The translations under genes and the position numbers were made by a program. 64,000 bases of DNA from Scyliorhinus canicula (Eukaryota), in the NCBI RefSeq assembly GCF_902713615.1, contig NC_052148.1, positions 252,150,690 to 252,214,689 of the forward strand. Direction: 5' to 3'. Position 1 is the stretch's first letter, and each line of letters opens with the position of its first letter. Under the pieces are notes generated by a model. It did no database searches, was not told the origin of the DNA, and saw only the letters and a list, made by a program, of their open reading frames with translations. Positions 18,685-57,743 of this stretch are shown here, one piece after another.

Positions 18685-19012
18685 GAGCTGACTGGTGGTG
18701 ATTTAACCTGAGGATCACCACACCTCAGGCGAGGGGCACGGTTGAGAAGGCGGGGCCTTCATGAATAACCTCAGCCGGTAGGGGAATTGAAACCGTGCTG
18801 CTGGCCTTGTTTAGCATCACAATCCTGGGTTTCCTCCGGGTGCTCCGGTTTCCTCCCACAAGTTCCGAAAGACGGGCTTTTAGGTAATTTGGACATTCTG
18901 AATTCTCCCTCCATTTAGCCAAACTGGCGCCGGAATGTGGCGACTAGGGGCTTTTCACAGTAACTTCATTGCAGTGTTAATGAAGCCTACCTGTGACAAT
19001 AAAGATTATTAA
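18685..19012. mobile_element. Fused SINE fragments: MetaSINE-like (minus, 18685-18825) joined to the 3' half of a V-core SINE (plus)
   Basis: First part matches 57570-57705; second has gggtttcctccgggtgctccgg and the tail seen at 38770-38835. Confidence 0.65.
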
Positions 19013-32851: not shown

Positions 32852-34916
32852 TGATGTGTTAGGCAGGATGGTTCGATGTGGACTGCACTCGATGCAGGGA
32901 AGTTAGAAACAGACGTCTAATACTGGAGAAGATCCAACACTGTTTTATTCAACTATAGAACTGCTATACATATTCAGCTGAGGGTCGACACTATACTGAT
33001 CTGACTGGTGACCTTGTAGTAGCCTGACCAGACTTACTAGCTACCGCATGGTGTTTGCACTTGCTAGCTCGTGGACTCTGACTGTCTCAGTAGCTGGGTC
33101 CTGAGAGAACGGGAAACCTAGTGCCCTCTGGCTTTATAGTGGTAGTGGTCTGTCTGGTGATTGGCTGTATTGTGTTGTATGCTTACTGGTCAGCCTATGT
33201 GTCAATCACTGCCTGTCTGCATCTCATTAGCTACATGAGTGGATATTATGACATCTCCCCTTTTTTTTTAGTTAAATAAATACTGAGGTATGTATATGTA
33301 TATATATATGACGATATGCAAGCGGTGCTTGAACAAACATATAGACATGGGAAGGTGTCGATAGTGCAGATACATGGCAAATGAAGCAATATTTACAAAG
33401 GTTAAATAGATGAATTCAGTCACAAAATTTACAAAAGTTCAGTCTACAGATTCAGTCTTTGTGGTGGGCGATGAATTCTTGTCGATCGCCCCAGAGGTGG
33501 ATCAGGAGCCGCCTGCACGTGGATAGATGGGATCGCCGGCTGCTGAGCGGTGGAGCGGATTTGTAAAGGGCTGCGCAGTGGCTAAGCTTGCCACACTGGA
33601 GACATCGGCATCCTTTTGCCGGACATTGCCACTTTAAGTGGGCGGAGCCACAATTCGGACACGCATGACGCTGATGTCAGTGCGTTCCGTGCGCCATCGC
33701 GCATGCACAGTGCGATCGGTCGACGTACGCACCTGCGCAGTGGGGTTGTCGGTCTCGTCGTCCACTTGGTCGTGGCGCGCATGCGCAGGGATCTGGGAAA
33801 AGCGCGCAAAATGGCCACTCTCCTCGATGCTCAGGGCCTGCATCTGTGCGATGGCCTGCACCCTTTCCGCCTCGTGGGAGGCCAGCTTTGCAGTTTCTGC
33901 CGCCCTGATGTGGGAGTAACGATTCTTGGCATGTTCATGGACAATACACATCTCAATAGCGACAGAGAGGGTCAACTGTTTGATTTTAAGGAGCTGCTGC
34001 CGCAGGGAGTCGAAGTGGACCCCGAAAACGATCTGATCTCGGATCATGGAATCAGCCGTTGAGTCATAGTTACATGACTGTGCTAGGATGCGGAGATGGG
34101 TCAAGAAGGAGTGAAAAGGTACATCCTTACCCTGAAGCCTCTGCTGGAAGATGTACCGTTCAAAGCTCTCATTCACCTCAATGTCGCAGTGGCTGTCGAA
34201 CTTCAACAGGACTGTTTTGAATTTTGTTTTGTCTTCGCCGTCGGCAAATGTAAGGGAGTTGTAGATATAGATGGCGTCATTCCCCGCAGTGGAATCCTGG
34301 CATTCTTCCTGGCATCCGATGCTGCCTCGAGGTCGGAGGCCTCGATGTACAAGAGGAACTTTTGCTTGAAGATTTTCCAGTTGGTGCCGAGGTTGCCGGA
34401 GATGCGGAGTTGCGGAGGAGGTTGGATGTTTTCCATTTCGCTGGATGGCTGCTTGCTGGTCAATGCTGATTCACTCGAGGTAGGTCCGTCAAGATCAAGA
34501 ACACTCTAGTACCATGATGTGTTAGGCAGGATGGTTCGATGTGGACTGCACTCGATGCAGGGAAGTTAGAAACAGATGTCTAACACTGGAGAAGATCCAA
34601 CACTGTTTTATTCAACCATCGAACTGCTATACATATTCAGCTGTGGATCGACACTATACTGATCTGACTGGTGACCTTCTAGTAGCCTGACCAGACTTAC
34701 TCGCCACCGCATGGTGTTTGCACTTGCTAGCTCGTGGACTCTGACTGTCTCAGTAGCTGGGTCCTGAGAGAGCGGGAAACCTAGTGCCTTCTGGCTTTAT
34801 AGTGGTAGTGTCCTGTCTGGTGATTGGCTGTACTGTGTTGTATGCTTACTGGCCATCCTATGTGTCAATCACTGCCTGTCTGCATCTCATTATATACATG
34901 AGTGGATATTATGACA
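32852..34916 (-). mobile_element. Internally deleted gag-only Gypsy (Mag-like) element; LTRs 32852-33253 and 34515-34916
   Basis: Two similar 402-bp LTRs; TSD GGGGT; PBS TGGTACTAGAGTG (tRNA-Leu-like); PPT A8GGGGAGA. Confidence 0.93.
33585..34436 (-). pseudogene. gag: Gypsy gag (frameshifted)
   Basis: MENIQPPPQLRISGNLGTNWKIFKQKF...; FERYIFQQRLQ...SMIRDQIVFGV. Confidence 0.85.
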
Positions 34917-45803: not shown

Positions 45804-47149
45804 GCCAGGATGTGATTCGATAGTGTCTTGCACACCCGTACTTCATCGATGTGTTTGATCAGGTGATGCATTGGCTGTCAGTGGCAGATTTTATTTGTGT
45901 TTTGCCAACTTCATACCTGCCCCAGGAGGAAATTGAAGAATCCCCCCTGTATCAATTGCAGGCGAATTCTACTTTGTCTCCACAGAGCATGGTACCCATG
46001 TCTACTTAAGACCTAATGGCCTCAGTGTGTTACTCTTTGACTTGATTTTGGGCGTGAGGCTCAGAGCAAAGTATCAGTTGGCATCTACACACCAAGTTTG
46101 CCAAAAATTGGTCTCTGCTGTAAAATTCTGTGGCTTCAACCCAGTGGCACGATGACCTGTTCACAGAAACAGACTCTAGCGGGTCCTGGAGATAATCTTT
46201 TTTTTTAAAAGTACGTTCTGCTGGGTTTGTTACAACATTTAGTAGGTTAGAGAAAGAGTTCACATTTAGTGTTTTTATGAAAATGGAATGATAACTGGAT
46301 AATTGGTTATGGCTCCTATGCCAGCGCAGTCTCTTTGAGGGGCAAGCCCTTGAGGTCCGTCTCTGGGCCTTTTGCATGGGAGCGCGTGAATGCCGTCCAA
46401 TGAGGAAAAAGCACGGGGCCTAGATAGAATAGACGCTGGAGCCAGAGAGCCAAGATCTGTTTGGTGACTCTATGCCTGTGTATAGTTTACCTTTGACCTG
46501 TTATCAGTAAACCCTTTTTCCATTATACTGGACTGATGCACCATCAATTGGACTCGAGTCGTGAAGAAGTTTCAAATATCAGGCCTTAATGAACTAGTTG
46601 TGTGCCCGGCAGTCAACTTACAGAGAAAGGCCGACTGCCGGCTGCTACGGGTTCTTATACCCCGCCTCATAGGAGGGGCTACCGGCCTCTCGGCCAATCG
46701 GCGAGCAGTCACATGACTGACCTCAGCCAATTGGCAGAGAGACACATGACCTGCCAGAGCCAATGGGCAGTGAGTCCTCTGTACCAATGGCAGCACTACT
46801 CTGAGGTGCCGTAAACCTCCTGGTCATACCACCACATTCACCCCTTGTGGAGAAAGAAGCCGGGGGGGGGGGGGGTGGGGAGACGAGGAGAGGAGAAAAG
46901 GGAGGGGGGGGGGGCGTCGAACTGGTAGTATGACTAGAGAGAACGAAGTGTACCAAGATGTCTGGTGGCTGCCCACTGGCCCGCGACGAATGTACAAAAG
47001 AACAACAACAACAATACTGCACACAATGCACTTATGAACAACCGAGGAACAAACAAGCAAAAAAAAACAATAAGGAAGATGCAACAGTGTACAAGGGAAC
47101 GCTGAACAACACGAAGAGTCCGACAAAAAGTCCAGTGGAACATCAAATC

Positions 47150-50090
47150 GACTCGATCAGTCTGATGGGTGCCTTCAATGTCCTGCTGGACCTGCGCAGC
47201 GGCGCCGGTGACGTTGGAGCGGTGGTCGTCCGTGACTCCGGGAGCGGCTGTCGTGGTCCTGTGTTCCGTACCCCTGGTTGGTGCTAGCGAAGCACTGGCC
47301 GGGTCAGAGGGTTCCTGTGCGCTGGGTTGCGGGGGCACTGGGGGTGCCGGGGTGGGGGGGGGGGGGGGGGGGGGGGGGGGGGTGGGGGTGGGGGGGGCTG
47401 GGACTGGGGGGGCAGTGTTGGTGTGGGGGGCTGTGGCCGTACGCCGGGGGGTGCCAGGTCCCGAAGGGAGACCATGTCCTGCCGCCCATCGGGATACTCC
47501 ACGTATGCGTACTGCGGGTTAGCGTGGAGTAACTGGACTCATTCAACCAACGGGTTGGACTTGTGCACCCGCACATGCTTCCGGAGCAAGGTGGGCCCGA
47601 GGGTGGCCAGCCAGGCCGGGAGTGGGGATCCTGAGGATGACTTCCTGGGGAAAACAAGAAGACGTTCATGAGGTGTTTGGCTCGTGGCAGTACAGAGGAG
47701 AGACCAAATCGAGTGGAGGGCGTCTAGGAGAACCTCTTGCCAGTGGGAGATAGGGAGATTTCTGGACCGTAGGGCCAGTATTATGGTCTTCCAGACCGTA
47801 CCATTCTCCTGCTCGACCTGTCCGTTACCCCAGGGTTATAACTGGTCGTCCTGCTAAGGCGATGCCCCTGCTGAGCAGGAATTGACGCAGCTCATCAGTC
47901 ATGAAAGAGGACCCCCGGTCGCTGTGGATGTATGCGGGGTAACCAAACAGGGAGAAAATGGAGAGGAGGGCCTTGATGATGGTTGTTGTGGTCATGTCGG
48001 GGCAGGGGATGGCAAAAGGAAAGCGGGAGTACTTGTCAATCACACTTAGAAAGTATATGTTGCAGTTGTTGGAGGGGAGGGGATCCTTGAAGTCCATGCT
48101 GAGACGTTCAAAGGGGCCGGACGCCTTTAGCAGATGCGCTTGCTCGGGGCGGTAGAAGTGTGGCTTGCACTCCGCGCAAATGTGGCAGTCCCTAGTTACA
48201 GTTCTGACCTCCTCGATCGAGTAGGGCAAGTTGCGGGTCTTAATGAAATGGTAGAAGCGGGCTACCCCTGGATGGCAGAGGTCCTCGTGGAGGGTGCGGA
48301 GGCGGTCTGTCTGCGCACTAGCACAGGTAGCGCGGGATAGGGCATCAGGAGGCTCGTTGAGCTTCCCAGGACGATACAAGATATCATAGTTGTACGTGGA
48401 CAACTCGATCCGCCACCGCAAGATCTTGTCGTTCTTGATCTTGCCCCTCTGTGCATTATCGAACATAAAGGCCACTGACCGTTGGTCTGTGAGGAGGGTG
48501 AACCTCCTGCCGGCCAGATAGTGCCTCCAGTATCGCATACCTTCGACAATGGCCTGTGCCTCCTTTTCCACCAAGGAATGGCGGAGTTCGGAAGCGTGGA
48601 GGGTCCGGGAAAAGAAGGACACGGGTCTGCCCGCTTGGTTCAGGGTGGCCGCCGGAGCTACATCGGGCACGTCGCTCTTGACCTGGAATGGGAGGGACTC
48701 GTCGATAGCACGCATCGTGGCCCTTGCAATGTCTGTTTTGATGCGGCTAAAGGCATGGCGGGCCTCCATCGACAGTGGAAACGTGGTGGATTGGATGAGG
48801 GGCGGGCTTTGTTGGCGTAGTCCGGGACCCACTGGGCATAATAAGAAAAGAAGCCCAGACAGCATTTGAGGGCTTTGAGGGAGTTGGGGAGAGGGAGTTC
48901 CATTAGGGGGCGCATGCATTCGGGGTCGGGGCCTATCACTCCGTTACGCACTATGTAGCCGAGAATGGCTAGACGGTGCTAAACACGCACTTATCCTTAT
49001 TGTATGTGAGGTTAAGGAGTTTTGCGGTATGGAGGAATTTTTGGAGGTTGGTGTCATGCTCCTGCTGGTCGTGGCCGCAGATGGTGACATTGTCGAGATA
49101 CGGGAAGGTTGCCCGTAAACTGTGTTGGTCAACCATTCGGTCCATCTCCCGTTGGAAGACCGAGACCCCATTTGTGACACCGAATGGAACCCTTAGAAAG
49201 TGGTAGAGGCGCTCATCCGCTTTGAACGCAGTGTACTTTCGGTCACTTGCGCGGATGGGCAGCTGGTGATAGGCAGACTTAAGGTCCACTGTGGAAAATA
49301 CTTTGTACTTCGCAATCCTGTTAACCAGGTCGGAGATACGGGGGAGAGGATACGCGTCCAGCTGTGTAAACCTGTTGATGGTCTGACTGCAGTCAATGAC
49401 CATCCGGTTTTCCCCCCCAGTCCTAACCACCAGCACTTGGGCTCGCCAGGGACTGTTGCTGGCCTCAATGACGCCTTCCTTCAGCAGCCTCTGGACCTCG
49501 GACCTGATGAAGGTCTGGTCTTGAGCACTGTATCGTCTGCTCCTAGTGGCGATGGGCTTGCAATCCGGGGTGAGGTTCGCAAACAAGGAAGGCGGGTCCA
49601 CTTTGAGGGACGCGAGGCTGCAGACAGTAAGGGGGGGAATAGGGACGCCGAATTTAAAGGTCAAGTTCTGCAGGTTGCATTGGAAATCCAGTCCTAAAAG
49701 TGCTGGTGCACAGAGATGGGGAAGGACGAGGAGTTTGTAATTTTTGAAAACCCTCCCCTGGACCGTGAGGTCCGCTACGCTGCACCCGGTGATTTGGATG
49801 AGTGCGAACCTGAAGCCAGAGCGATTTTGTGCTTAACCGGGTGAACAGGGAGCAGACAGCGTCTTACCATGTCAGGGTGGACAAAACTCTCTGTGCTGCC
49901 GGAGTCTAGTAGGCAGCTCGTCTCGTGTCCGTTTAGGAGGATTTGTGTAGTCGCCGTGGAGAGCGTGCGGGGCCGCGATTGGTCCAGTGTCACATCAGCG
50001 AGTCGTGGCAGGAGCTCTGAGTCGTCTTCTCCCATGGAGTATTCACTGGTGGGGTCCTCCGTGCCGACCCAAACTGGTGGCGTCCGTGGG
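47150..50090 (-). pseudogene. pol: pol (protease, RT, RNase H, integrase), frameshifted
   Basis: LLDSGS; DLKSAYHQ...PFGVTN...YLDN; EKEAQAIV...LLTDQ; H-H-C-C zinc finger; MDF...IDKYSRF...HSDRG. Confidence 0.92.
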
Positions 50091-50984
50091 TCACTCGTGG
50101 TGGCTGGGAGCGGGGACAGAGAGGTTTGTGGGCCGCCCGGGGCCTTGGGGGGTGCGGGGGGGGGGGGGGGGGGGGGGTGATCCACGGTCGCTGCGCAGAA
50201 CAGCAGCAACCGTCCTGGACTGGCAGACCACGGAGTTGTGGCCCTTTTTACCGCAGCTCTTGCAGACTGCGGAGCGGGCCGGACAGCGCGGGCGGGGGTG
50301 CTTGGTCTGGCCACAGAAATAACAGCGGGGCCCCGTGGGCTTATCGGGGTGTCCCGCAGCGCAGGCCTCGGGGGGGGGGGGGGGGTCGGAATCGTCGGGG
50401 GTGAGGGGAGGTGCATGCCAAGTTGCCCAAGGGGTCGCCGCGCGGCCGTGGACATATGCGCGGGCGTTTCGGTCGGCAACCTCCAGGGAGGATGCGAGGG
50501 TTCGTGCCTCAATGAGGCTCAAAGTGTCCTTCTCTAGGAGCCGCTGGCGTATCTGAAAGGATTGCATGCCCGCGACAGAGGCATCTCTGATTAGCAGTTC
50601 AGTGTGCTCCGCCGCGGTAACGTGCGGGCAGGCACAATTTCTCCCCAGGACAATGAGGGCCCGATAAAACTCATCAAGTGACTCACCGGGGAACTGTTGC
50701 CTTGTTGCCAGGAGGTGCCACGCGTACACTTGGTTTACAGGCCTCAGAAAATGTCCTTTCAGGAGATCCATGGCTGCGTCATAGTCCTTTTCATCCTCTA
50801 TCATCGAATAAACGGCGGTGCCCACGCACGAGTGGAGGATGTGGAGTTTCTGCTCCTTTGTTGGTTGATTGTCTGTAGTGGTGAGGTAACTATTGAAGCA
50901 CGCCAGCCAATTTTTAAGAGTTGCTGACGCGTTTGTAGCATGCGAGCTGATGCGGAGACAGTCTGGTTTGATCCGAAGCTCCAT
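50091..50984 (-). pseudogene. gag: gag with two zinc knuckles
   Basis: CYFCGQTKHPRPRC and CKSCGKKGHNSVVC; frame disturbed at a G/C homopolymer. Confidence 0.9.
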
Positions 50985-51726
50985 TTCCAAATTCTAGTTC
51001 ATTAAATTGATGCACCATCAATTGGACTCAAGTCGTGAAGAAGTTCCAAATATCAGGCTTTAATGAACTAGTTGTGTGCCTGGCAGTCGACTTACAGAGA
51101 AAGGCCGACTGCCGGCTGCTATGGGTTCTTACACCCCGCCTCGTAGGAGGGGCTACCGGCCTCTCGGCCAATCGGCGAGCAGTCACATGACTGACCGCAG
51201 CCAATTGGCAGAGAGACACATGACCTGCCAGAGCCAATGGGCAGCAAGTCCTCTGCACCAATGGCAGCACTACTCTGAGGTACCGTAAACCTCCTAGTCA
51301 TACCACCACATGGACGTCTCACTAGTATTGCCTTGAGCCATTACAGCCCCTACAAATGTTGCCACATATTTACAATGACCAAAACTGGTAAATTAGCATA
51401 CGGTATTCTCCATCCAACGTGATCTGAATTGAATTAGTTTATGTTAACGAATTGAATGCCTAAACTTTTTTTTTAAAGTATTTTTTTCTCCCCCTCTTTC
51501 ACATTTTCTCTCGAATTTACACCCACCAACAACAAACAATAATCAACAACAAATATGTCAAACCCCATAACAAGAACAACGATCCCATCCTCCCACCAAC
51601 CCCCAAACATCAGCCCGCATGTTAACATAAACAAATGACAAAAAAGGAATCAGGGATTACCCATAGCCATCTTTAATATACACAGCACCCTCCCCCCCAA
51701 CCCACCCATCCACCCCCCCCCCCCAG

Positions 51727-54700
51727 CTAATGTTCGATGTTATCCAGTTCTTGAAAGTGCATAATAAATAGTGCCCATGACTTGTAGAACCCCTCCGAGC
51801 CTCCCCTCAGTTCGAACTTAACCTTCTCAAGGGTCAAGTATTCCAACAGGTCCCCCCGCCACGCCAGGGCACAGGGTGGAGAGGCTGCTCTCCATCCCAA
51901 CAGGATCCACCTTCGGGCGATCAACGAGGCTAAGGCTACGATATCTGCCTCCGCACCCGTTTCCAACCCTGGCTGGTCTGACACCCCGAATATGGCCTCC
52001 CGGGGACCCGGGTCCAGTTTCACACGCACCACCTTGGAAATTACCCTAAACACCTCCTTCCAATACTCCCCTAGCTTTGGACAGGACCAAAACATATGAA
52101 AGTGATTAGCGCCCCCCCCCCCCCCCCCCCCCCCCGCCGCCCGCAACATTCACACACATTTTCTACTCCTTCAAAGAATCGGCTCATCCTCACCCTCGTG
52201 AGGTGTGCTCTGTACACCACCTTCAGCTGTATCAGCCCCAACCTCGCACATGAGGTGGAAGCATTCACTCTCCGGAGCACCTCACACCAGAACCCCTCCT
52301 CGATAACCTCTCCCAACTCTTCCTCCCACTTTGCTTTGATCCCCTCCAGTGGTGCCTTATCCTTTTTCCAACATAGCTCCGTATACCGCTGACACTGCCC
52401 CCTTCTCCAGTCCCCTTGCCGTCAGCACCTCCTCCAACAACGTGGAGGCCGGTTCCTCCAGGAAGCTCTGTATCTCCTTCCTGGAAAATCCCGAACCTGC
52501 ATATATCTAAACACTTCTCCCTGCTCCTGCCCATACTTCGCTTCCAGCTCCCTCAATCCTGCAAATCGACCCCGAAGAAACAAATCTTTTAGCGTCTTAA
52601 TCCCCTTCTCTTCCCATTTCCAAAAGCTTCCACCCCACCTCCCTGGCTCAAATCTGTGGTTCCCCCGAATCGGCATTTCCCTTGACCCTGCCCCCAACCC
52701 GAAGTGTTGGCGAAACTGCCTCCAGATTTTCAATGAAGCTATTATTACCGGACTCCCTGAGTATTTCCCCGGAGCTATCGGGAGCGGTGCTGTTGCTAGT
52801 GCTTTCAGTCCCGACCCCCTGCACAAACTCTCCTCCATTCTGACCCACTGGGAATCAACCCCTCTGACCCAGCTCCGCACCTTCTCCACATTTGCTGCCC
52901 AGTAGTAGTACATCAGGTTCTGGAGACCCAAACCCCCTGCCTGCCTTCCCCTCTGTAGCAGCACCTTCCTCACTCTGGCCACCTTCCCTCCCCATATGAA
53001 CGAGGTAATCTTTCCCTCAATCTCCCTGAAAAAAGGCTTTGGCAGGAAAATCGGTAGCATTGAAAAATCGCGGCAACACATTAATTTTAACCGCCTGTAC
53101 CCGACCCACCAGTGACAGAAAGACCATCCCACCTTGCCAGATCAGCTTTCACTCTCCCCACTAAACTAGTGATATTATACCTGCGAAGCCTTCCCCACTC
53201 CCAGGCAACCTGCAGCCCCCAGATACCTAAAATGAGTCCCAGCCCTACGGAATGGCTGCCCCCACCTCTGTTTCCTTCCCTTCCACCGGTGCCATAATGA
53301 CATTCAAAACCTCCTAATATTTGAAAACAGCTGCCTCCCTTTCACGAACCCAGTCTGATCCTCACCTATCACCTTCGGGAGGCACTCCTCCAGCCTACCT
53401 GCCAGTACCTTCGCCAATACTTTTGTGTCCACATTCAGAAGTGATATGGGCCGATACGACCCACACTCCGTCGGATCCTTATCTTTTTTAAGCAACAATG
53501 AAATCAATGCCTGCCCCAAGGTTTGCAGCAACACTACCTTCCCTGTCGCCTCTTCAAACATCCCCACCATCAGGGGTGCCAACTTATCCTTAAACTTTTT
53601 ATAATATTCCACCGGAAACCCATCCGGCCCTGCCACCTTCCTCGACTGCATCCTCCCAATCGCATCTTTTATCTCCTGCTCCACTATTGCTCCTTCTAAT
53701 GTAGCCCTGTCCCCCTAGCCTCGGGTACTCCAACCCATCTAGAAATTCCAGCATCTCACGGTCTCCCCCGGGTGGCTCTGACCTGTACAACCTCTCGTAA
53801 AAATCCTCAAAAACCTTGTTAATCAGCTCCGGAGCCACCACCAACTTCCCGGCCCTATCCCTTACCTGAAGAATTTCCCTTGCCGCTGCCTCCCTCCGGA
53901 GCTGACCTGCTAACATACGCCGGCCTTGTCTCCGTGTTCATAAACTGCACCCCTTGCTCGTCTCAGTTGGCGCACCGCCTTCCTGGTGGATAGTCGGTCG
54001 AAGCTCGCCTGTAGTTCCTTCCTCTTTCCCAGCATCGCTGGGTCTCCATCCTCTGCATAACTCTGATCTGCCTCCAACATCTCATCTATTAGCCTCTGCC
54101 GCTCCACCCTCTCTTTGTCCATCCTGGCCTTGAACAAAATTACCTCACCTCTCACTACCGCCTTTAGAGCCTCCCAGACGACTGCCTTCGACACCTCACA
54201 CGTACAGTTGAATCTTACATATTCCTTAATTACCTTTTCAATTTTCTCACAGAATACTTGGTTCCCCAAAAGCCCCACATCCAGTTTCCACCCCGGCCTC
54301 TGCACTATCCCCTTCTCCAGCACCATATCCACCTAATGTGGCGCGTGATCTGACACAGCAATTGCAGAGTATTCCGACCCTTTGACTCCAGCCAGCAAAG
54401 CCTTTCCCACCACAAAAAAATCGATCCGCGAGTATACCTTATGGACTGCTGAGAAAAACGAGTACTCCCGTTCTCTTGGGTGCAGGAACCTCCAAGGGTC
54501 CACCCCTCCCATTTCCATTAGCCCAGCCAGCGCCATCGCCCCCCCTGATGGGACCAGCGAGCGCGGCCGTGATCTGTCCAACCTTGGCTCCTGCACCAAG
54601 GTCCAGTCTCCCCCACAATCAGCTCCGTGTGTGTCTAAGTCAGGGATGGCCCCAAACACCTTCCTCGCGAATCCCACATCATCCCAATTGGGACCGTATA

Positions 54701-55025
54701 CACTTACCAGCATCACTAACCTCCCCTCCAGCGCCCCTGTCACAATCACATATCTACCCCCCTGATCTGCCACCACCTTCTCCATCTGGAAGCTAACCCT
54801 TTTGCTGACCAACACCGCTACCCCTCGAGCCCTTCCATCAAATCCAGAGTGAAACACTTGGCTAACCCAGCCCTTTTTAAGTCTCACCTGGTCCTTCACC
54901 CCCAAGTGAGTCTCCTGCAGCATTGCCACATCGGTTTTCAAACTTTTAAGATGCGCAAGCACCCTTGACCTCTTGACCGGACCTCCTAGCCCTCTCATGT
55001 TCCACGTGACTATCCTAACTGGGGG
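51727..55025 (-). pseudogene. L1 ORF2p (APE endonuclease, partial RT, C-terminal zinc finger)
   Basis: VTWNMRGL...LQETHL...RIDFF...SDH; GPDGFPVEYYK...YRPISLLN...QTGFV; CECC...HMFWSCP. Confidence 0.9.
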
Positions 55026-55599
55026 TCTATCACCCCCCTCCCCCCACCTTTCTTATCCACCATCATCATACCCCTGGGCCCTGCCCCATAAGCCTGACCT
55101 GCTCCTGTCTATTGTTAGCATCGAACCCCTTCCCCCCCCCCTCTCGAGAACCCCCCCTACATTGCCCCCTGAAACAGCATCCCCCAACATCCATCCCTTC
55201 CTCCCCCTCTCGCTCGCCTCGTAGGCCCATTGAAGCCTACTATCCAGGCTGCAATGTCCGCAGCCCTCCTCTCACCTCACCTCCGTTCACTAGCTGACTT
55301 TAGCTAGCTAGTGCGGGTGGCTCCCCCCCCCCCCCCCCCCCGCCTCGATATATAATCTCTTTCCACCCAGTCCCAGAGAAAGAAACAAAACAACCCAACA
55401 ATCCAACCCCTACAATTCGTGAACGTAACATTTAACCGTCGCAACACAGAACGCCAATCAACCCACCATTAACTTGAACTCTGTAACAATGCAAAGAGAA
55501 GTAAATTACAATACAAATCCGTAAAAAGAAAGTTATAACATTTATACATTTTCCAGCTGTTCAAACACAGTCCAAGTCTCTCTTCCAGTTCCGCTCTTC

Positions 55600-56508
55600 A
55601 CGTCTGTCCCAAGCCTTCTGCCCTCATGAATGCCTCAGCTGCATCCGCTGTCTCAAAATAAAAGTCTTTGCCGTTATACGTTACCCTCAACTTCACTGGG
55701 TACACCATACCAAACCATACCCCCTTCTTGTACAACGTCGCCTTCACTCGCCCAAACGCCGCTCATCTTTTTGCCAACTCCACCGTCAAGTCCTGGTAGA
55801 TCCGAACCGCAGTACCATCCCATAGCACCTCCCGCTTCTGCTTCGCCCAGCTTAATACCTTCTCCTTCATGCAAACCTTATGGAAGCAGATAATTACTGC
55901 CCTTGGTGGATCGTTCACTTTGGGCTTCGGCCTTAATGACCGATTAGCTCAGTCTAGCTCGTACCGGGAGCGGTTCTCACCCTCCCCCATCAGCTCCGCC
56001 AACTTCTTAGCGAAGTATTGTGTTGGCCTTGGGCCCTCTGTCCCTTTGGGCAAGCCCACAATTCTCAAATTATGCCGCCTTGAGCAGTTTTTCAAGTCTT
56101 CAAGCTGTGCTCGGAGTCCTCTGTTAACCTCAACAACCCTCCGCAGCTCGTCCCCCATCGAGCTGACCTGGTCGCTGTGTCGTGACATGGCCTCCTCCAC
56201 TTCCTTCATCTTCTCGCCCTGCTCTCTCACCTCGGCCAAAGTCTTTGCCTCCGCCACGTCCACCAGGGCGATTGCCTCCTCCACCAATGACTTCAATGCG
56301 ACCGCCGTCTCCTTCCTCAAGGCCTCCATGTGCCTCGCAAATTATTTTTCCAGCTCCACCGCCATCACCTCGGTCAACTTCTCCACCGTAAATAGTGCGG
56401 CCCCGCTTTGCAGTTCGGCTTCCGCCATCATGTCAACACTTTTATTCGTCTTCTCCTTCAGCGGCGAACCCGCGTTTCCTCCTTTGTTCGACGCTGCTTT
56501 TCGCATCC
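55600..56508 (-). pseudogene. L1 ORF1p (coiled coil plus RRM), frameshifted
   Basis: LEDLKNCSRRHNLRIVGLPKGTEG. Confidence 0.85.
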
Positions 56509-57514: not shown

Positions 57515-57743
57515 ACTTTGTTAAGCAATCCCAGATGATGACCACAGGCTGCTTTGCCCCTTGAGGGGGAGAGCTGACTGGTGGTAATTTAACCTGAGGA
57601 TCACCACACCTCAGGCAAGGGGCAAGATTGAGAAGGCGGGGCCTTCATGAATAATCTCAGCCGGTACAGGAATTGAACCTGCGCTGCCGGCCTCGCTCTG
57701 CATCACAAGCCAACTGGCCCGCCATCTGAACTAAACCAGCCCC
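57515..57743 (-). mobile_element. tRNA-derived SINE with MetaSINE-like core
   Basis: GGGGCTGGTTTAGTTCAG head; GGTTCAATTCC B-box; CCTGAGGTGTGGTGATCCTCAGGTTAAA hairpin core (family name from memory). Confidence 0.65.

What the first reader, a model, noticed from the sequence alone, without database searches (positions are those of the whole stretch)
50994..51071. Gypsy element with no tRNA PBS: the PBS position pairs with its own LTR poly(A)-signal segment (candidate self-priming)
Seen: on the element (minus) strand the 5' LTR ends ...TGCATCA and is followed after 1 nt by TTTAATGAACTAG (plus 50994-51006), not TGG. This is the exact reverse complement of CTAGTTCATTAAA in the LTR (plus 51059-51071), 52 nt away. 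The 3' end of the LTR arm would pair next to the U5 edge, the correct geometry for priming minus-strand strong-stop DNA. Established: Tf1/sushi-type chromoviruses self-prime using the transcript 5' end. Inference: this element shows no chromodomain, and the arm lies about 60 nt downstream of the TATA box (probably about 30 nt into the transcript) and ends in ATTAAA. It may therefore use a different self-priming scheme (internal cleavage, or the 3' R copy as primer), or hide the 5' LTR poly(A) signal, or both.
Basis: partly seen in the sequence, partly recalled or inferred. Interest (0 to 1): 0.85.

Follow-up and report, generated by a model that had tools for sequence, protein, structure and literature searches.

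The report
Self-priming Gypsy retrotransposon, poly(A)-signal primer
This broken shark retrotransposon, like its relatives from corals to sharks, has no tRNA primer site; the bases after its 5' repeat pair exactly with a segment of that repeat ending at the poly(A) signal, so it most likely primes its own reverse transcription, as yeast Tf1 does.

Summary
A dead 4.8-kb Ty3/gypsy element lies on the minus strand, with 303-bp LTRs about 95% alike and the target duplication GTCCA. One base after its 5' LTR sits TTTAATGAACTAG. This is the exact complement of CTAGTTCATTAAA, 52 nt upstream in the same LTR.

The pairing is not chance. Among related elements fetched from other animals, 23 of the 26 with both LTRs carry the same duplex at the same place. 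Across 20 families the 13-bp core holds 256 Watson-Crick pairs, no G·U pair and 4 other cells. Ten of the 13 pairs show compensatory changes. In 14 of 20 families the LTR arm ends in AATAAA or ATTAAA.

The lineage has no chromodomain, looks slightly closer to Drosophila gypsy-type elements than to Tf2, and carries an unusual YxDN motif in its reverse transcriptase.

Best reading: Tf1-like self-priming in a non-chromovirus, probably Mag-like, animal lineage. The transcript start, the poly(A) site and the cleavage step remain untested, because the RNA reads were too sparse.

The scan had already found this on other DNA of the same genome (follow-ups s1-195922 and s1-236501). I rate it a new variant of a known mechanism.

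The parts
51311..51315 (-). Target-site duplication GTCCA, upstream copy
   Evidence: same 5 bases follow the 3' LTR
51008..51310 (-). 5' LTR (303 bp, TG...CA)
   Evidence: 95.4% identical to the 3' LTR
51128..51133 (-). TATA-like box (TGTAAG in this copy; TATAAG in the 3' LTR at 46654-46659 and in reads of other copies), preceded by four CCAAT-type palindromes
   Evidence: row 51132 C>T in all reads. Function as a promoter is inferred
51059..51071 (-). LTR arm CTAGTTCATTAAA, ends in the poly(A) hexamer ATTAAA; proposed self-primer
   Evidence: homologous arm in 20 families
51008..51058 (-). 51 nt between arm and LTR end (rest of R plus U5); begins with the nearly invariant GCCT
   Evidence: R/U5 border not determined
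51007..51007 (-). Single spacer base A between LTR end and primer site
   Evidence: the same ...CA-A-TTTA arrangement occurs in most relatives
50994..51006 (-). Primer-binding position TTTAATGAACTAG, exact complement of the arm; not TGG
50091..50984 (-). gag open frame (ATG 50984), two CCHC zinc knuckles
   Evidence: homologues in Scyliorhinus torazame at 46-60% identity
49775..50512 (-). Protease piece, in a different frame from gag
   Evidence: weak aspartyl protease matches
48969..49664 (-). Reverse transcriptase piece, motif C reads YLDN
   Evidence: RVT_1 E 1e-21; 51% identical to L001
47825..48919 (-). RNase H and integrase piece; no chromodomain downstream
   Evidence: 80% identical to a Scyliorhinus canicula protein
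46837..46846 (-). Polypurine tract AAGGGGTGAA next to the 3' LTR
   Evidence: read directly
46534..46836 (-). 3' LTR; its arm copy (46585-46597) reads CTAGTTCATTAAG, one mismatch
46529..46533 (-). Target-site duplication GTCCA, downstream copy

Best explanation
The element belongs to a widespread animal lineage of compact Ty3/gypsy retrotransposons (3.7-4.8 kb, no chromodomain, probably Mag-like) that prime minus-strand DNA synthesis with their own RNA instead of a host tRNA. A 13-18 nt segment of the LTR-derived leader, which in most families ends with the poly(A) hexamer, anneals to the complementary bases that start 0-4 nt after the 5' LTR. By analogy with Tf1, the element's RNase H is inferred to cut the RNA right after ...AAA. 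The new 3' end is then extended through U5 and the rest of R, and the short strong-stop DNA moves to the 3' R. Plus-strand strong-stop synthesis then re-copies the primer into the primer site, which keeps the two arms strictly complementary. What is shown: the duplex, its position, its conservation and its covariation. What is inferred: the cleavage, the source of the primer's 5' end (transcript start or a second cut), and a possible second role in masking the 5' poly(A) signal.
For: The duplex is exact and sits in priming geometry in the window.

Of the 26 related loci with both LTRs, 23 have an exact duplex of 10 nt or more at the same place, and two more have a decayed version.

Exact stems of 11 nt or more are far commoner upstream of gag than in coding sequence: 33 in 82 kb against 3 in 140 kb.

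On 20 families, 91.8% of cells pair, against 29-48% when the register is slid. Fourteen of 18 pairs have changes on both sides, and 0 of 500 shuffles reach the observed score.

RNAalifold finds the same 13-bp helix on its own, with 10 of 13 pairs compensatory and no one-sided change.

The core has 256 Watson-Crick cells and no G·U. This fits templated re-copying better than selection on RNA stability alone.

L015 and L017 are 98.5% alike, yet they differ by one exactly compensatory pair.

The primer sites differ between families and never start with TGG. The gag ATG follows within 0-10 nt in most families, so there is no room for another primer site.

Another LTR element in the same window has an ordinary TGG site.

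Self-priming through such a duplex is established for Tf1 and proposed for relatives (PMC4600332, PMC10085805).
Against: There is no direct RNA or cDNA evidence. RNA reads over the LTR were few, came from both strands, and were mostly from other copies. They showed no start or end hot spots and no poly(A) tails.

In this copy the TATA-like box predicts a start about 32 nt upstream of the arm. The primer would then carry an unpaired 5' tail, unlike Tf1.

The helix is A+U-rich, and the 131-nt leader folds no better than shuffles (z -0.64), although the minimum-energy fold does contain the helix.

Cleavage of an RNA-RNA duplex by RNase H is proven only for Tf1.

Nineteen of 48 loci with enough upstream sequence showed no duplex. 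None of these had a detectable LTR pair, so they are probably truncated or decayed copies.

This copy is itself dead.
Confidence: 0.7

Rival explanations
1. The duplex only masks the poly(A) signal of the 5' LTR so that full-length RNA is made, while reverse transcription is primed by something else.
For: Fourteen of 20 arms end in AATAAA or ATTAAA, and the rest end in close variants. Masking of a 5' poly(A) signal by a hairpin is known from HIV-1 (my own knowledge).
Against: The 3' arm always starts 0-4 nt after the LTR end, which is where a primer must sit, and gag starts a few bases later in most families, so no other primer site exists. There are no G·U pairs in 256 cells, whereas an RNA hairpin would tolerate them. 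In L011 and L012 a canonical hexamer lies outside the duplex.
Confidence: 0.1
2. The duplex is a packaging, dimerisation or translation-control structure in the leader and is unrelated to priming.
For: It lies in the 5' leader next to the gag start codon, where such signals are usually found.
Against: This does not explain the fixed register against the LTR end, the strict Watson-Crick pairing, or the absence of any other primer site.
Confidence: 0.07
3. The complementarity acts at the DNA level, for example by helping a strand transfer or forming a hairpin in strong-stop DNA, with an unknown primer.
For: Strict Watson-Crick pairing without G·U is what DNA pairing would show.
Against: No known step of LTR replication needs U5-adjacent DNA to pair with R upstream of the poly(A) site, and a primer would still be missing.
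Confidence: 0.05
4. A host tRNA, tRNA fragment or other host RNA is the primer, and the match to the LTR is secondary.
For: Internal tRNA segments do prime some elements (half-tRNA sites in copia-type elements, PMC6317226).
Against: The sites begin with TTTA, not TGG. They differ between families in one genome and across phyla, and each matches its own LTR. The only tRNA-like gene in the window (His) does not contain the 13-mer. The host's full tRNA set could not be searched.
Confidence: 0.03
5. The match is a chance inverted repeat.
For: The sequence is A+T-rich and short.
Against: Only 0.06 matches are expected in the window. Control windows reach 7-9 nt, and once 11 nt. The repeat is conserved with covariation in 20 families.
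Confidence: 0.01

Closest known systems
Tf1, Tf2 and Tj1 of fission yeasts (Tf1/sushi group of chromoviruses)
   Same: There is no tRNA site. The bases just after the 5' LTR pair with a segment of the element's own LTR-derived leader, and the 3' end of that segment faces U5 (PMC4600332, PMC10085805).
   Different: In Tf1 the primer is the first 11 nt of the mRNA, and the leader forms a three-duplex 'pretzel'. Here the duplex is 13-18 bp, ends at the poly(A) hexamer and, in this copy, lies about 32 nt downstream of the TATA-predicted start. A second helix is not established. The lineage has no chromodomain. Its RT-RNase H is 27% identical to Tf2 against 30-33% to Drosophila elements.
sushi-ichi and other vertebrate Tf1/sushi elements
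   Same: They are vertebrate Gypsy elements for which self-priming was proposed from sequence (cited in PMC10085805 and PMC6317226).
   Different: They are chromodomain-bearing chromoviruses. The original paper (Butler et al. 2001) could not be read here.
Plant Tcn1 chromoviruses and TAR Ty1/copia elements with predicted self-priming
   Same: They show that self-priming has been predicted outside fungi and even outside Ty3/gypsy (PMC6317226).
   Different: They belong to different superfamilies or clades and different hosts. No link to the poly(A) hexamer has been reported.
Mag lineage of Ty3/gypsy (Mag, SURL/C-clade, Jule)
   Same: These are compact animal Gypsy elements of about 4-5 kb without a chromodomain, spread from cnidarians to vertebrates (PMC2774666, PMC6238403). 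That matches the size and host range seen here.
   Different: Membership was not tested, because no reference sequences were available in the tools. I found no report of their primer type in the searchable library.
HIV-1 poly(A) hairpin
   Same: It is an RNA structure that holds the poly(A) hexamer of the 5' R (my own knowledge).
   Different: It is a local hairpin that does not involve the primer site, and HIV is primed by a tRNA.

Membership tests
Ty3/gypsy LTR retrotransposon | LTRs with TG...CA ends and a short target duplication | tested here: met
   303-bp LTRs, TG..CA ends, 5-bp GTCCA duplication
Ty3/gypsy LTR retrotransposon | Domain order gag, protease, RT, RNase H, integrase | tested here: met
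   Pfam matches in that order on the minus strand; the same order in intact relatives
Tf1/sushi self-priming chromoviruses | Primer site complementary to the element's own LTR-derived RNA, not to a tRNA | tested here: met
Tf1/sushi self-priming chromoviruses | Chromodomain at the integrase C-terminus | tested here: not met
   No Chromo match in this copy, in four intact Pol proteins, or in the precomputed Pfam lists of 120 homologues
Tf1/sushi self-priming chromoviruses | Self-primer is the exact 5' end of the mRNA | tested here: inconclusive
   RNA reads gave no start sites. The TATA-like box predicts a start about 32 nt upstream of the arm in this copy. In L085 the arm starts only 66 nt into a 120-bp LTR, so there the start must be near it.
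Tf1/sushi self-priming chromoviruses | Three-duplex 'pretzel' leader structure | tested here: inconclusive
   The central duplex is present. A hairpin that starts right after the arm is seen in 14 of 20 families, but no more often than at control positions.
Tf1/sushi self-priming chromoviruses | RT groups with Tf1/sushi in a phylogeny | tested here: inconclusive
   No tree with references was possible. In structure-based alignments, identity is 27% to Tf2, 28-29% to Ty3, and 30-33% to Drosophila 297, gypsy, opus, 412 and 17.6. NCBI's automatic names for homologues are '17.6' and 'opus'.
Mag lineage (Mag, SURL, Jule) | RT/RNase H/integrase groups with Mag, SURL or Jule references | not testable with these tools
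   No reference sequences could be fetched. Size, missing chromodomain and host range agree.
tRNA-primed LTR elements | Primer site complementary to a tRNA 3' end (starts TGG) | tested here: not met
   The site starts TTTAAT. In the 20 aligned families with the poly(A)-type arm the site starts with TTT (one copy reads TGT). The neighbouring element at 32852-34916 has TGGTACTAG.

The most novel reading that the evidence does not exclude
These elements use a self-priming scheme distinct from Tf1. The primer is cut internally from R, right after the poly(A) hexamer, and may carry a leader that runs back to the cap. The same duplex silences the 5' copy of the poly(A) signal, and the primer site is rewritten from the primer at every cycle. 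If so, one 13-bp helix would solve priming, poly(A) choice and escape from tRNA-fragment silencing, in a lineage that is as old as animals and whose reverse transcriptase has YxDN in place of YxDD.
Probability: 0.3. Interest if true: 0.8.

Novelty: new variant of a known kind. Interest (0 to 1): 0.6.

Why it matters
Self-priming has been shown by experiment only in fission-yeast Tf1-type chromoviruses. It has been predicted only for their relatives and for a few plant lineages. This finding places it in a different, very widespread animal Gypsy lineage that reaches vertebrates, so independence from tRNA is not a fungal oddity. Such elements would be invisible to defences that target tRNA primer sites, and to annotation tools that require a tRNA site. 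The tie between primer and poly(A) hexamer suggests a compact solution to the old question of how elements with the signal in R avoid using its 5' copy. That idea becomes directly testable with RACE and strong-stop cDNA sequencing.

Tried and rejected
DNA of the closest relatives. Three look-ups for Scyliorhinus torazame gag homologues returned no DNA because the files were too large. Two Logan look-ups also returned none.

Transcript ends.
- Four raw RNA runs were laid on the element and then on the 5' LTR alone. Depth was low, reads lay on both strands, and most were only 85-95% alike. There were no start or end hot spots and no poly(A) tails.
- The reads show a sister family with primer site TTTAATTAACTAC, but they do not link it to its LTR arm.
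- No fetched contig ends in poly(A).
- The Logan contigs L083-L085 are circular permutations, not transcripts.

Initiator idea. I considered that a conserved AG 11 nt before the arm's end marks the transcript start, which would give an 11-nt primer as in Tf1. I set it aside because the two pairs upstream of it pair in 19 and 20 of the 20 families, with much covariation.

Second hairpin. A hairpin after the arm was not supported against controls.

Reference phylogeny. A tree against Tf1/sushi, Mag and CsRn1 was not possible. The rough substitutes were a PDB sequence search and a Swiss-Prot fold search.

Older papers. Key older papers are not held, including SURL 1991, Mag 1990, Levin 1995, Lin and Levin 1997 and 1998.

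Chromovirus comparator. The window holds no chromovirus to use as a comparison.

Full report
ANATOMY. The finding sits in a 4.8-kb LTR retrotransposon on the minus strand. Its 5' LTR is 51310..51008 and its 3' LTR is 46836..46534. Both are 303 bp with TG...CA ends, and they are 95.4% identical. The element is flanked by the 5-bp duplication GTCCA. Between the LTRs lie:
- a gag frame with two CCHC knuckles, with its ATG at 50984;
- a protease piece in another frame;
- a reverse transcriptase piece;
- an RNase H plus integrase piece.

All of these are interrupted by stops and frameshifts. A polypurine tract, AAGGGGTGAA, abuts the 3' LTR. The copy is dead. Its RNase H-integrase piece is 80% identical to a Scyliorhinus canicula protein, and its gag is 46-60% identical to S. 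torazame proteins, so the host is a shark.

THE OBSERVATION. One base after the 5' LTR comes TTTAATGAACTAG (51006..50994). This is the exact reverse complement of CTAGTTCATTAAA (51071..51059) inside the LTR, 52 nt away. The 13-mer occurs nowhere else in the 64-kb window, apart from the 3' LTR copy, which has one mismatch. Only 0.06 matches are expected by chance. The site does not start with TGG. The gag ATG follows it by 9 nt, so there is no space for another primer site. A different small LTR element in the same window (32852-34916, minus strand) has the ordinary TGGTACTAG site, which makes a useful contrast.

RELATIVES. The gag search gave two foreign loci with DNA (L001 and L002). An RT-RNase H search found more than 1,200 proteins about 50% identical. 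Their hosts include octocorals, sea anemones, stony corals, molluscs, flatworms, a sea cucumber, crustaceans, a moth, a ray and sharks. A scan of metagenome contigs added 80 loci, and a Logan look-up added three more. The elements are very compact, with 3.8-4.5 kb between LTR starts and LTRs of 120-320 bp.

Of the 26 loci in which both LTRs could be found:
- 23 have an exact complement of 10-17 nt between the bases 0-4 nt after the 5' LTR and an LTR segment 21-67 nt upstream;
- two more have a decayed version;
- one was undefined.

Exact stems of 11 nt or more with a 15-100 nt loop number 33 in 82 kb upstream of gag, against 3 in 140 kb of coding sequence. Of 48 loci with enough upstream sequence, 25 show the exact duplex at the expected distance from RT and four more show 12 of 13 matches. 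The other 19 have no detectable LTR pair and are probably truncated or decayed.

COVARIATION. I aligned 20 families from the arm to the primer site (A3). With the register fixed by the window's duplex, 91.8% of cells pair, against 29-48% when the partner is slid by 1-3 columns. Fourteen of 18 pairs have changes on both sides, and no shuffle of 500 reaches the observed score. Ten of its 13 pairs are compensatory and none shows a one-sided change.

The core holds 256 Watson-Crick cells, no G·U and 4 other cells. L015 and L017 are 98.5% alike over 700 nt, yet they differ by one exactly compensatory pair. Strict Watson-Crick pairing, together with paired changes between near-identical copies, is what one expects if the primer site is re-copied from the primer during plus-strand strong-stop synthesis, as happens with tRNA primers. 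This step is inference.

LINK TO THE POLY(A) SIGNAL. In 14 of 20 families the arm ends in AATAAA or ATTAAA. The rest end in TTAAAA, GTTAAA, TTTAAA, CATAAA or ATAAAA. The last three bases are AAA in all 20 families, and the next bases are RCCT almost without exception. In this copy, and in most families, no other canonical hexamer lies between the arm and the LTR end. In L011, L012 and L082 one does. So the tie to the hexamer is strong but not absolute.

WHERE THE PRIMER STARTS. This remains open.
- In this copy a TATA-like box lies 62 nt upstream of the arm. It reads TATAAG in the 3' LTR and in all reads from other copies. It is preceded by four CCAAT-type palindromes and predicts a start near 51103, about 32 nt before the arm.
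- In L085 the whole LTR is 120 bp and the arm starts 66 nt into it, so there the start must be close to the arm.
- A conserved AG lies 11 nt before the arm's end and looks like an initiator. However, the two pairs upstream of it pair in 19 and 20 of the 20 families, with much covariation, so the RNA must reach further upstream.
- RNA reads from four public runs were too sparse and too mixed to show starts or poly(A) ends.
- An unchecked note elsewhere in this genome (s1-198237) reports a perfect 46-bp fold-back at a Gypsy LTR.

WHAT KIND OF ELEMENT IT IS. No chromodomain is found in this copy, in four intact Pol proteins, or in the precomputed Pfam lists of 120 homologues. In structure-guided alignments to Swiss-Prot models, RT-RNase H identity is:
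- 30-33% to Drosophila 297, gypsy, opus, 412 and 17.6;
- 27% to Tf2;
- 28-29% to Ty3.

The best solved relative by sequence is Ty3. This is a rough test, not a phylogeny. Size, host range and the missing chromodomain fit the Mag lineage as described in PMC2774666 and PMC6238403, but I could not test membership.

COMPARISON WITH WHAT IS KNOWN. Self-priming through a duplex between the mRNA 5' end and the primer site is established for Tf1. It is proposed for Tj1, for other Tf1/sushi elements, for plant Tcn1 and for copia TAR elements (PMC4600332, PMC10085805, PMC6317226). I found no report of it for Mag-type or other non-chromoviral animal Gypsy elements in six full-text searches. The older key papers could not be read, so prior description cannot be excluded. 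The scan itself has noted this feature many times in this genome, and two follow-up reports reached the same reading.

VERDICT. The most likely function is Tf1-like self-priming (about 0.7). Masking of the 5' poly(A) signal is a plausible second role. The mechanism's details are inferred, not shown.

Noticed in passing
window 48969-49664 (-) and homologues P0008-P0127: Motif C of the reverse transcriptase reads Y-x-D-N instead of the usual Y-x-D-D in 90 of 110 homologues, and in this copy (YLDN). The lineage is clearly successful, so the polymerase must work with Asn at that place.
   Followed up: partly
A3 columns 23-26; window 51055-51058 (-): RCCT directly after the arm is almost invariant (C in 20 of 20 families at the second place). 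A hairpin RCCU...AGGY starts there in 14 of 20 families, with many G·U pairs, but control start positions give similar rates, so it is not established.
   Followed up: partly
window 32852-33253 and 34515-34916 (-): A 2-kb LTR element has 402-bp LTRs that are 95.5% alike, a polypurine tract, and an ordinary tRNA-type primer site TGGTACTAGAGTG. No coding capacity was seen.
   Followed up: partly
window 54333-54998 (-), region 52000-56000: An ORF matches the LINE-type endonuclease family, within a stretch of strong negative GC skew.
   Followed up: no
window 57658-57741 (-): A tRNA-His-like sequence overlaps repeat family D5 (18685-18825 and 57571-57711, 89% alike). This may be a tRNA-derived SINE.
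   Followed up: no
L083, L084, L085 (whole contigs): Three runs each give a 3746-nt contig that is a circular permutation of the same element with a single 120-bp LTR. This is either assembly collapse of the two LTRs or one-LTR circles.
   Followed up: no
L002 7355-7650: The 5' LTR of this relative carries a 295-bp insertion with terminal inverted repeats (TAGGGATGTGCC...), which looks like a miniature DNA transposon.
   Followed up: no
L020 33-139: A more distant family has a 14-nt duplex in the same position, but its LTR arm lies 79 nt upstream and does not end in a poly(A) hexamer. The priming duplex may therefore be older than its tie to the hexamer.
   Followed up: no
window 46860-46880 and 50369-50385: Single-cell RNA reads show many joints and loose ends made of G runs at two C-rich tracts of the element. 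These look like library artefacts, not splicing.
   Followed up: no
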